DNA of 56,961 bases, from the NCBI RefSeq assembly GCF_006345805.1, contig NW_021833681.1:1-56961 (forward strand), written 5' to 3'. The notes below the pieces were generated by a model that was not told where the DNA came from, ran no database searches, and saw only the letters and a list, made by a program, of their open reading frames with translations. This DNA comes from Octopus sinensis (Eukaryota). Positions 5,755 to 6,640 of the stretch are shown here, one piece after another (within the stretch, counting starts at the first letter, position 1; each line of letters begins with the position of its first letter). Both the position numbers and the translations under genes were made by a program.

Positions 5755-6640
5755 GTGATGTCAAAGATCAATGATCAAAGATTTTTCAGCTGTGATCAAC
5801 GAGAGCAATAGTTAAATACATGTTGCAGTCTTGAACTAAGGAATCAATGATCAAAGATATTTAATCTCTGATTAAAATTCTTCAGCTCAAGATACCTACA
5901 TTCAAAGATCGCACAACTTTGATCAAAGATCGTTCACTTCTTACCAAAGAACTATGAACAAAACTTCTTTCTCTAATTAAATGTGTCCAAATCTGAGATC
6001 CCTTCAATCAGAGATCTCTAAGCTCTGATCAAAGATCTTTCAGGTTTGATCAAAGATCATTAATCGCAGATCAAAGATAGTTGAAGACTGATCATTTATC
6101 TCAGATCAAAGATATTTGAGGGCTGATCAAAGATCTTTCCGCTCTGATCAAGGATCATTGAGACCTGATCTTTCAGATATATCAGTTCTTTTCCGAGACC
6201 TCAGACCAGAGATTTTGACCTCTGATCAAAGATGTCTATGATAAAAAATACTCCCGGTTTTAATCAAAGCGGCCAATTATCAAAGATTGTTTTAGTCCTG
6301 ATCAAAGTGTCTTTTCGTTTATACTTTTATTCTTCTACTTGTTTCGTTTATTTGACTGTGGACAACTCCGATGAAAGAGATCTATGATCAAAAAATTTTA
6401 GGCCCAGGTAAAATAGATCAATGATGGAAGATTTCTCAACACGCTTCAAAGAAATTTATTATCAAAAATGTTGAAACCCTGATAAAAAAAACAACAAAAA
6501 CTTAAGATCAAAAGTTATTCAGTCCTGATCAAAGAGGCCTATGATAAAAGACATTCCATCATTAAAACAAAAAACCTTGGATCAACTTGGTCCTGATCCA
6601 AACGCTTATAATCAAAGGAAATTTAGCTCTGACCAAGGAT
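5755..6640 (+). promoter_or_regulatory. Homotypic array of GATCAAAG (TCF/LEF-like) motifs, ~21 bp period
   Basis: 11 exact GATCAAAG (5773, 5849, 5921, 6027, 6048, 6069, 6104, 6125, 6224, 6300, 6527) plus many 1-2 mismatch copies in the same orientation. All six frames are closed in the 6001-6180 core. The array is certain; its function is inferred. Confidence 0.5.

What the first reader, a model, noticed from the sequence alone, without database searches (positions are those of the whole stretch)
5755..6640. Helically phased array of TCF/LEF-like GATCAAAG motifs with unrelated spacers
Seen: 11 exact GATCAAAG and many near matches, nearly all on one strand. GATC starts at 6027, 6048, 6069, 6090 and then 6104, 6125, 6146, 6167, which are exact 21-bp steps. 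The same step occurs at 5773/5794 and 5849/5870. The core is conserved while the spacers are not. CTTTGATCAAAG at 5917-5928 is a perfect palindrome. The core region has stops in all six frames. Established: (A/T)(A/T)CAAAG is the TCF/LEF HMG-box site, and 21 bp is two helical turns. Inference: a motif-selected array, possibly a natural Wnt-response enhancer grown from a minisatellite. It could instead be a subterminal transposase-binding array.
Basis: partly seen in the sequence, partly recalled or inferred. Interest (0 to 1): 0.7.

Follow-up and report, generated by a model that had tools for sequence, protein, structure and literature searches.

The report
Decaying 21-base minisatellite in octopus DNA
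This is an old, partly decayed tandem repeat in a repeat-rich stretch of octopus-like DNA; its match to a Wnt/TCF binding site and its 21-base step come from how the repeat was built, and nothing found here shows that it regulates anything.

Summary
The motif counts and coordinates are correct. The "unrelated spacers" claim is not.

**What is there.** About 42 GATCAAAG-like words lie head to tail over 5720-6640. They share a 21-nt consensus, GATCAAAGATCTTTCAGCTCT. Five of its 11 spacer columns are 80-93% conserved.

**How it was built.**
- Tandem heptamers survive at 5759-5782, and the one odd unit is exactly 14 nt. The 21-mer therefore looks like three diverged heptamers.
- Both flanks have a roughly 74-nt higher-order period (16+21+16+21).
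- Only the centre (6005-6187) keeps an exact 21-nt register, so helical phasing is not maintained across the array.

**Against a Wnt enhancer.**
- Only 16 of the 42 words still fit WWCAAAG.
- Mutations hit the CAAAG positions as often as the flexible first base.
- No Helper (RCCGCC) site is present.

**Against a transposon end.** There are no terminal inverted repeats and no inverted partner array in the window.

**Chance.** A uniformly decaying array at 76-80% identity gives nine or more intact 10-mers with P of about 0.1-0.6.

**Still unexplained.** Six columns vary much faster than the rest.

**Not done.** Orthologous loci and genome-wide copies could not be reached with these tools.

**Verdict.** An ordinary minisatellite of low interest.

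The parts
5716..6640 (+). Whole degenerate tandem array. About 42 GATCAAAG-like words (2 or fewer mismatches) lie on the + strand, 11 of them exact.
5759..5782 (+). Tandem heptamers TGTCAAA GATCAAT GATCAAA GAT, the likely seed unit of the array.
   Evidence: TRF period 7, 3.1 copies, 86% matches; 7-nt spacings.
5750..5995 (+). Left flank: older copies with a period of about 76 nt.
   Evidence: autocorrelation peak at lag 76; families D8, D9.
5917..5928 (.). Palindrome CTTTGATCAAAG, made of two overlapping core words on opposite strands.
6005..6187 (+). Central block in exact 21-nt register: eight full units plus one 14-nt unit. It holds internal block duplications at shifts of 35, 77 and 98 nt. 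Five of the eight words are exact.
6089..6102 (+). 14-nt unit (TGATCATTTATCTC), a 21-mer that lacks one heptamer. It causes the 35-nt step from 6069 to 6104.
6191..6640 (+). Right flank: older copies with alternating 16- and 21-nt sub-units, giving a 37/74-nt higher-order period. 3 of 21 words are exact.
6320..6358 (+). Short piece, free of the motif, that interrupts the array. It resembles the 5' end of a high-copy octopus dispersed repeat: 82% identity to window 31114-31152 and 86% to L121 7877-7911.
5245..5269 (+). Outlying GATC-rich piece, 85% like array positions 5783-5802. It lies 450 nt upstream, on the far side of the (GAT)26 microsatellite.
   Evidence: (D11)

Best explanation
This is a neutral minisatellite, built in layers, late in its life, sitting in non-coding, very repeat-rich octopod DNA.

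**Shown**
- The repeat has a 21-nt consensus, GATCAAAGATCTTTCAGCTCT.
- Runs of heptamers survive, and the one odd unit is 14 nt.
- The flanks have a higher-order period of about 74 nt (16+21+16+21).
- The centre is in exact 21-nt register and carries block duplications.
- Intact words are densest in the centre and fall off toward both edges.
- Decay is AT-biased.

**Inferred**
- Replication slippage or unequal exchange first multiplied a heptamer, GATCAAA.
- A 21-mer made of three diverged heptamers (GATCAAA, GATCTTT, CAGCTCT) was then multiplied.
- Dimers and tetramers of unit variants followed, and last came a re-expansion of the 21-mer in the centre.
- On this reading GATCAAAG is just the heptamer plus the first base of the next one, and 21 nt is 3 x 7. 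The TCF-like word and the "two helical turns" are then by-products.
- The better preservation of the 10-nt core in the centre has two likely causes. Units that keep the longest identical stretch are the ones that keep misaligning and being copied. The intact units were also the ones picked for inspection.

No function for the organism is required.
For: **Repeat background.** 28% of the window lies in tandem-repeat rows.

**Heptamer layer**
- TRF calls a period-7 run at 5761-5782.
- There are six 7-nt spacings, and 22 of 41 spacings are multiples of 7.
- The odd unit is 14 nt.

**Spacers share ancestry**
- A 21-nt consensus exists, with 15 of 21 columns at 73% or more.
- Spacers align between blocks at shifts of 98, 77 and 105 nt.
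- Six higher-order copies align to a 74-nt consensus.

**Decay pattern**
- Exact words number 3 of 13 in the left flank, 5 of 8 in the centre and 3 of 21 in the right flank.
- 22 of 25 changes at G/C positions go to A or T.

**Chance and convergence**
- A uniform-rate simulation with a duplication history gives nine or more intact 10-mers with P = 0.10-0.58 at 76-80% identity.
- The same word forms heptamer and 21-mer arrays in unrelated metagenome contigs, several of them gene-dense and prokaryote-like. Examples are L012, L062, L059, L112 and L084.

**No coding or structure signal**
- There is no coding potential.
- There is no Rfam match.
- Single-strand folding is not unusual, z = -1.6.
Against: - Conservation along the unit is uneven beyond what AT bias can give (about 1.2-fold by my arithmetic). 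In the six central units with intact cores there is 1 change in 10 core columns against 16 in the other 11 (Monte Carlo P = 0.004).
- If the true per-site identity were as low as that of the spacer columns alone (0.67-0.72), nine intact 10-mers would be rare (P = 0.02 or less).
- Core-dependent copying is inferred, not shown.
- The heptamer origin rests on modest evidence. The three consensus heptamers share only 2-4 of 7 positions. The lag peaks at 35, 56, 77 and 98 nt in the centre all follow from the single 14-nt unit.
Confidence: 0.6

Rival explanations
1. The array is a fragment of a mobile element. It could be an internal or subterminal motif array of a DNA transposon, Helitron-type or other element. 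The core would have been kept by selection on the element family, and the copy would have decayed after insertion.
For: - The core is conserved while some positions vary freely, which is what such arrays show.
- Octopus genomes are about 66% repeats (PMC13282606).
- A microsatellite lies beside the array.
- An outlying unit lies 450 nt upstream (D11).
Against: - The only flanking inverted repeat found is a 10-nt microsatellite match.
- There is no inverted partner array anywhere in the 57 kb.
- The flanks 4950-7350 are not repeated in the window.
- Window positions 1760-12011 match nothing in 61 kb of Octopus vulgaris and O. sinensis DNA, although 18% of the window does.
- No transposon-like ORF lies within 6 kb.
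- Motif density peaks in the middle, not at an end.
- These tests have little power against a family of moderate copy number.
Confidence: 0.2
2. The array is a protein-binding platform kept by selection on the host. The TCF/Pangolin version (a natural TOPFlash-like Wnt-responsive enhancer) is the first reader's. Another factor that reads GATCAAAGAT is the broader version.
For: - GATCAAAG fits the HMG-site consensus SWWCAAAG, the reverse complement of the CTTTGWWS given in the abstract of PMC4267635. There are 12 such words on the + strand.
- The core is better kept than six of the spacer columns.
- Synthetic multimers of this site work as Wnt reporters in several systems (PMC4154663).
Against: - There is no Helper site (RCCGCC or GCCGCCR).
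- PMC4154663 states that such dense perfect clusters are not found in natural W-CRMs and that HMG-only reporters show little or no expression in fly tissues.
- Only 16 of the 42 words keep WWCAAAG, and CAAAG positions 7 and 8 are hit as often as the flexible first base.
- Conservation extends to columns outside the 8-mer (9, 10, 13, 14, 16, 20, 21).
- Phasing is lost in the flanks.
- The count of intact cores is reachable by neutral decay.
- The same words form arrays in prokaryote-like contigs.
- My estimate for the TCF-specific version alone is about 0.05.
Confidence: 0.15

Closest known systems
Minisatellites (VNTR-type tandem repeats) with a shared core and variant repeat units, as described for human minisatellites (from my own knowledge: Jeffreys and colleagues, 1985)
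   Same: - The unit is 10-100 nt, and copies lie head to tail on one strand.
- Variant units differ at a few positions around a shared core.
- There are higher-order periods.
- Young homogeneous units lie in one part and decayed units at the edges.
   Different: - The core here is A/T-rich and derives from a heptamer, unlike the G-rich human core.
- Nothing is known about length polymorphism or recombination at this locus.
Wnt-responsive cis-regulatory modules (W-CRMs) and the synthetic TOPFlash reporter
   Same: Repeated SWWCAAAG words in one orientation at short regular spacing resemble the synthetic reporter.
   Different: - According to PMC4154663, natural W-CRMs have few, scattered HMG sites.
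- In invertebrates these sites are paired with Helper sites. The array has none.
- Most words in the array are degenerate.
Subterminal transposase-binding repeats of DNA transposons such as CACTA/En-Spm and Ac (from my own knowledge)
   Same: A short conserved motif is repeated many times with partly variable sequence in between.
   Different: - Those arrays sit next to terminal inverted repeats and occur at both ends in opposite orientation.
- Here there are no terminal inverted repeats and no partner array, and the motif is densest in the middle.
Binding-site arrays carried by mobile elements, such as the 12 Su(Hw) sites of the gypsy insulator (from my own knowledge)
   Same: It is a dense one-strand array of a conserved short motif separated by A/T-rich spacers of similar length.
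   Different: The gypsy array lies inside a recognisable retroelement. No element body is seen within 6 kb here.
Heptanucleotide tandem repeats in prokaryote-like metagenome contigs (loci L012, L062, L112, L007)
   Same: The same heptamer, GATCAAA, and its variants are repeated in tandem, which makes GATCAAAG words every 7 or 14 nt.
   Different: - They are unrelated loci with no shared spacers.
- They have no 21-nt or 74-nt layers.
- They serve only to show that slippage alone produces such arrays.

Membership tests
Minisatellite / degenerate tandem repeat | Head-to-tail copies of a 10-100-nt unit on one strand that share a consensus. | tested here: met
   TRF gives period 21 at 6007-6078 and 6104-6170. 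Fifteen in-register units give a 21-nt consensus. There are 42 + strand words against 26 on the - strand at 2 or fewer mismatches.
Minisatellite / degenerate tandem repeat | Spacers and cores descend from a common unit, so the spacers are alignable. | tested here: met
   Block alignments at shifts of 98, 77 and 105 nt. Spacer columns 13, 14, 16, 20 and 21 are 80-93% conserved. A 74-nt higher-order consensus exists.
Minisatellite / degenerate tandem repeat | All columns of the unit decay at a uniform neutral rate. | tested here: inconclusive
   The count of intact 10-mers fits uniform decay at 76-80% identity. Six columns are much more variable, and the central cores are nearly invariant.
TCF/LEF-dependent Wnt-responsive element | HMG sites that match SWWCAAAG. 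| tested here: met
   12 of the 42 + strand words fit SWWCAAAG and 16 fit WWCAAAG.
TCF/LEF-dependent Wnt-responsive element | Helper sites (RCCGCC / GCCGCCR) near the HMG sites, as used by invertebrate TCFs that carry a C-clamp. | tested here: not met
   No match on either strand in 5700-6660. The looser GCSGS pattern is at background density, 2.3 against 2.1 per kb. That octopus TCF has a C-clamp is inferred from PMC4267635 and was not tested.
TCF/LEF-dependent Wnt-responsive element | The critical CAAAG bases are protected relative to the flexible bases. | tested here: not met
   Mismatches per position 1-8 are 10, 3, 5, 6, 4, 4, 10, 9.
TCF/LEF-dependent Wnt-responsive element | TCF occupancy and a beta-catenin-dependent response. 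| not testable with these tools
   Needs EMSA, ChIP or ATAC-seq, and a reporter assay.
TCF/LEF-dependent Wnt-responsive element | The sites are conserved in orthologous loci. | not testable with these tools
   Exact-product look-ups, six-frame array translations and the neighbouring reverse-transcriptase fragments (best 61% identity) did not reach an orthologous locus.
DNA-transposon subterminal repeat array | Terminal inverted repeats flank the element. | tested here: not met
   Between 4950-5800 and 6560-7400 the only inverted match is a 10-nt CA/TG microsatellite.
DNA-transposon subterminal repeat array | A second motif array in inverted orientation at the other end. | tested here: not met
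   Outside 5-7 kb, - strand one-mismatch hits never exceed 3 per kb anywhere in the window.
DNA-transposon subterminal repeat array | Many dispersed copies in the genome. | tested here: inconclusive
   There is no copy in the window or in 61 kb of Octopus DNA, and no translated match among 5.8 billion proteins. This sample is far too small to exclude a family of moderate copy number.

The most novel reading that the evidence does not exclude
The 10-nt core GATCAAAGAT is kept by selection because a sequence-specific protein binds it. The protein could be an HMG-box factor such as TCF, or a factor recruited by a mobile element. The central block would then be a natural homotypic binding-site array that grew out of a minisatellite and acts as an enhancer, silencer or boundary in octopus.
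Probability: 0.1. Interest if true: 0.55.

Novelty: new member of a known kind. Interest (0 to 1): 0.15.

Why it matters
As it stands it matters little. It is one more decayed minisatellite in a genome where over a quarter of this window is tandem repeat.

It is useful as a caution. A short A/T-rich transcription-factor word, its one-strand orientation and an apparently helical spacing can all fall out of the arithmetic of a repeat (heptamer x 3). The same words form arrays in organisms that have no TCF.

If the residual excess conservation of the core proved to be selective, the locus would be an example of a regulatory array born from a tandem repeat in a cephalopod.

Tried and rejected
1. 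**Exact-product look-ups.** ORFs 6232-6387 and 5440-5673 were looked up to find the source or sister contigs. Nothing is on record.
2. **Array translations.** All six-frame open pieces of the array were joined with X and searched against 5.8 billion proteins. There was no hit at E = 0.1 or better.
3. **Metagenome pattern scan.** A scan for GATCAAAGAT-N11-GATCAAAGAT returned 120 loci. They are unrelated heptamer or 21-mer arrays, and none shares spacers or flanks with the window.
4. **Ortholog via neighbouring reverse-transcriptase fragments (12.8-14.6 kb).** The best hit had 61% identity, followed by Argonauta hians at 50%, so no orthologous copy was found.
5. **Sample of Octopus DNA.** Three Octopus vulgaris and O. 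sinensis loci (61 kb) were fetched through a LINE protein. They share dispersed repeats with the window but not the array.
6. **Hairpin or cruciform as the driver of expansion.** The DNA fold z-score is -1.6, which is not significant.
7. **CpG decay as the cause of the variable columns.** The dinucleotides seen at columns 11-12 are not dominated by TG or CA (read from the units).
8. **AT-biased mutation as the whole explanation.** The bias is real but gives only about a 1.2-fold difference by my arithmetic.
9. **Rfam and Pfam.** Rfam found nothing over the window. Pfam gave only one weak zf-RVT hit among nine window ORFs.
10. **Literature.** No paper describes this array. The detailed O. vulgaris repeat paper has no sequence library in its held supplement.

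Full report
**Observation**

- GATCAAAG occurs 11 times on the + strand and twice on the - strand. All 13 lie within 5716-6534. The whole 57-kb window is expected to hold 2.6 +/- 1.4, and 886 nt is expected to hold about 0.017 per strand.
- Half of all one-mismatch + strand hits in the window (22 of 44) fall in 5700-6660.
- The GATC starts at 6027/6048/6069/6090 and at 6104/6125/6146/6167 are in exact 21-nt steps.
- The palindrome at 5917-5928 is real.
- All six frames are closed.

The claim that the spacers are unrelated is wrong, and it matters for the interpretation.

**Anatomy**

At 2 or fewer mismatches there are 42 non-overlapping core-like words on the + strand between 5720 and 6631. 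The spacings are 21 nt (13 times), 7 nt (6 times) and 16 nt (4 times), plus others.

Fifteen units are bounded by words exactly 21 nt apart. They give the consensus GATCAAAGATCTTTCAGCTCT.
- Columns 1-10 are 73-100% conserved, but the units were chosen on these columns.
- Spacer columns 13, 14, 16, 20 and 21 are 80-93% conserved.
- Only columns 11, 12, 15, 17, 18 and 19 are variable, at 47-60%.

Self-alignment finds block duplications that include the spacers:
- 6007-6134 against 6105-6233, shift 98, 71% over 130 nt;
- 6023-6096 against 6100-6173, shift 77, 76%;
- 5865-5950 against 5970-6056, shift 105, 72%.

The flanks have a longer period of 76 nt on the left and 37/74 nt on the right. Six copies of about 75 nt align to a consensus made of 16+21+16+21-nt sub-units.

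Heptamers are visible.
- TRF calls a period-7 run at 5761-5782.
- Five further pairs of words are 7 nt apart.
- The one irregular unit in the centre is 14 nt. This is why 6069 to 6104 is 35 nt.
- The consensus reads as three heptamers: GATCAAA, GATCTTT and CAGCTCT.

One caution applies. The autocorrelation peaks at 35, 56, 77 and 98 nt in the centre all follow from that single 14-nt unit. The heptamer origin therefore rests on the 7-nt runs and on the 14-nt unit. It is likely, not proven.

Exact words number 3 of 13 in the left flank, 5 of 8 in the centre and 3 of 21 in the right flank. The array thus has a homogeneous centre with decayed edges.

A piece of about 40 nt without the motif, at 6320-6358, resembles the 5' end of a high-copy dispersed repeat.

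**Context**

- The window is octopod-like DNA. A LINE reverse-transcriptase fragment at 43897-44568 is 67-88% identical to Octopus sinensis and O. vulgaris proteins.
- 18% of the window matches dispersed repeats in just 61 kb of those genomes.
- 28% of the window lies in tandem-repeat rows.
- No credible ORF or dispersed-repeat match lies between 1.8 and 12 kb.
- No Rfam family matches.

**Is the core selected?**

In the six central units with intact cores, parsimony gives 1 change in the 10 core columns and 16 in the other 11. The Monte Carlo probability that some 10-column window holds 1 or fewer of 17 events is 0.004.

That test is inflated in two ways.
- The six units were picked because their cores are intact. 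Three units of the same block (at 6006, 6090 and 6167) have broken cores.
- The scan picked this array out of very many.

At the level of the whole array I simulated uniform-rate decay with a block-duplication history. Nine or more intact copies of some 10-mer (nine are observed) arise with P = 0.10-0.58 when mean identity to the founder is 76-80%. The mean over all 21 columns of the in-register units is 0.78. The probability falls to 0.02 or less only if identity is as low as that of the spacer columns alone.

In the older 74-nt layer, core columns show 69% pairwise identity against 50% elsewhere. Part of that gap comes from A-richness and from an alignment that anchors on the cores.

Decay is AT-biased: 22 of 25 changes at G/C positions go to A or T. 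By my arithmetic this accounts for only about a 1.2-fold difference between core and spacer.

So there is a real, unexplained unevenness along the unit. It is a pattern of 15 slow columns and 6 fast ones, not a pattern of a binding site plus free spacer.

**TCF/Wnt reading**

- GATCAAAG does fit SWWCAAAG, the reverse complement of the CTTTGWWS given in the abstract of PMC4267635.
- Only 12 of the 42 words fit SWWCAAAG, and only 16 fit WWCAAAG.
- Mismatches fall on positions 7 and 8 of the word, inside CAAAG, 10 and 9 times. They fall on the flexible first base 10 times.
- No Helper site (RCCGCC or GCCGCCR) occurs in the array.
[quoted passage not shown] - The "two helical turns" hold only in the central 183 nt. 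The 16/21 alternation in the flanks puts neighbouring words on different faces of the helix.
- A pattern scan of metagenome contigs found the same words in pure heptamer arrays and in 21-mers. Several of these contigs are gene-dense and prokaryote-like. Slippage alone therefore makes such arrays where no TCF exists.

**Transposon reading**

- No inverted repeats bracket the array apart from a 10-nt microsatellite match.
- There is no inverted partner array in the window.
- The flanks are not repeated in the window or in the 61-kb Octopus sample.
- Motif density peaks in the middle, not at an end.
- These tests are weak against a family of moderate copy number. I keep this rival at 0.2.

**Mechanism I commit to (confidence 0.6)**

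The array grew by slippage or unequal exchange in layers: a heptamer, then a 21-mer, then a 37/74-nt higher-order unit, and last a re-expansion of the 21-mer in the centre. AT-biased decay followed.

On this reading the TCF-like word is the heptamer plus the first base of the next one, and 21 nt is 3 x 7. I attribute the better-kept core in the centre to two things. Copying depends on the longest identical stretch, so units with intact cores keep being duplicated. The intact units were also the ones selected for inspection. Both points are inferred, not shown.

**What could not be done**

Orthologous loci and genome-wide copies are the decisive data, and these tools could not reach them. I tried exact-product look-ups, translated-array searches and searches with the neighbouring retroelement fragments. 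No paper describes this array.

**Verdict**

This is an ordinary, decaying minisatellite. One loose end remains, the six fast columns against 15 slow ones. I score interest at 0.15.

Noticed in passing
window 1-56961: 28% of the window lies in tandem-repeat rows (266 TRF rows). Most are trinucleotide microsatellites (ATT, GAT, ATC, ATA), many of them over 100 nt long.
   Followed up: partly
window 30581-31062 and 31111-31545: A 184-nt unit is repeated 2.6 times and carries a tRNA B-box-like GAGTTCAAATTCC. The sequence just after it is a dispersed repeat with up to 12 matches in only 61 kb of Octopus vulgaris and O. sinensis DNA. It is probably a SINE-type family.
   Followed up: partly
window 12816-14096 (-), 43877-44610 (+), 45986-46818 (-): Frame-shifted LINE reverse-transcriptase fragments. 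The closest named proteins are Octopus sinensis and O. vulgaris "jockey-like" proteins at 67-88% identity. This places the window in an octopod genome.
   Followed up: partly
window 35123-35884, with 35449-35580: A 253-aa ORF contains a stretch that looks like a mariner/Tc1-type transposase (from memory; Pfam found nothing). It is interrupted by a 15-nt minisatellite of 8.7 copies.
   Followed up: no
window 51714-52016 and 52059-52355: Two neighbouring ORFs encode nearly identical peptides. This indicates a tandem duplication of about 345 nt that includes an AT/TA-rich microsatellite.
   Followed up: no
window 5245-5269: A GATC-rich piece (TGATCGTTTAGATCTGTGATCAACGA) is 85% like array positions 5783-5802. 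It lies 450 nt upstream of the array, across the (GAT)26 microsatellite at 5518-5595. It may be a detached unit or a chance match.
   Followed up: no
L084 1256-1886 and L034 21-503 (metagenome contigs): A homogeneous 21-nt minisatellite, GAGATCAAAGATAATTAGCAT, has 18-25 copies. There the variant units change the GATC part and keep the spacer, the opposite of the octopus array.
   Followed up: no
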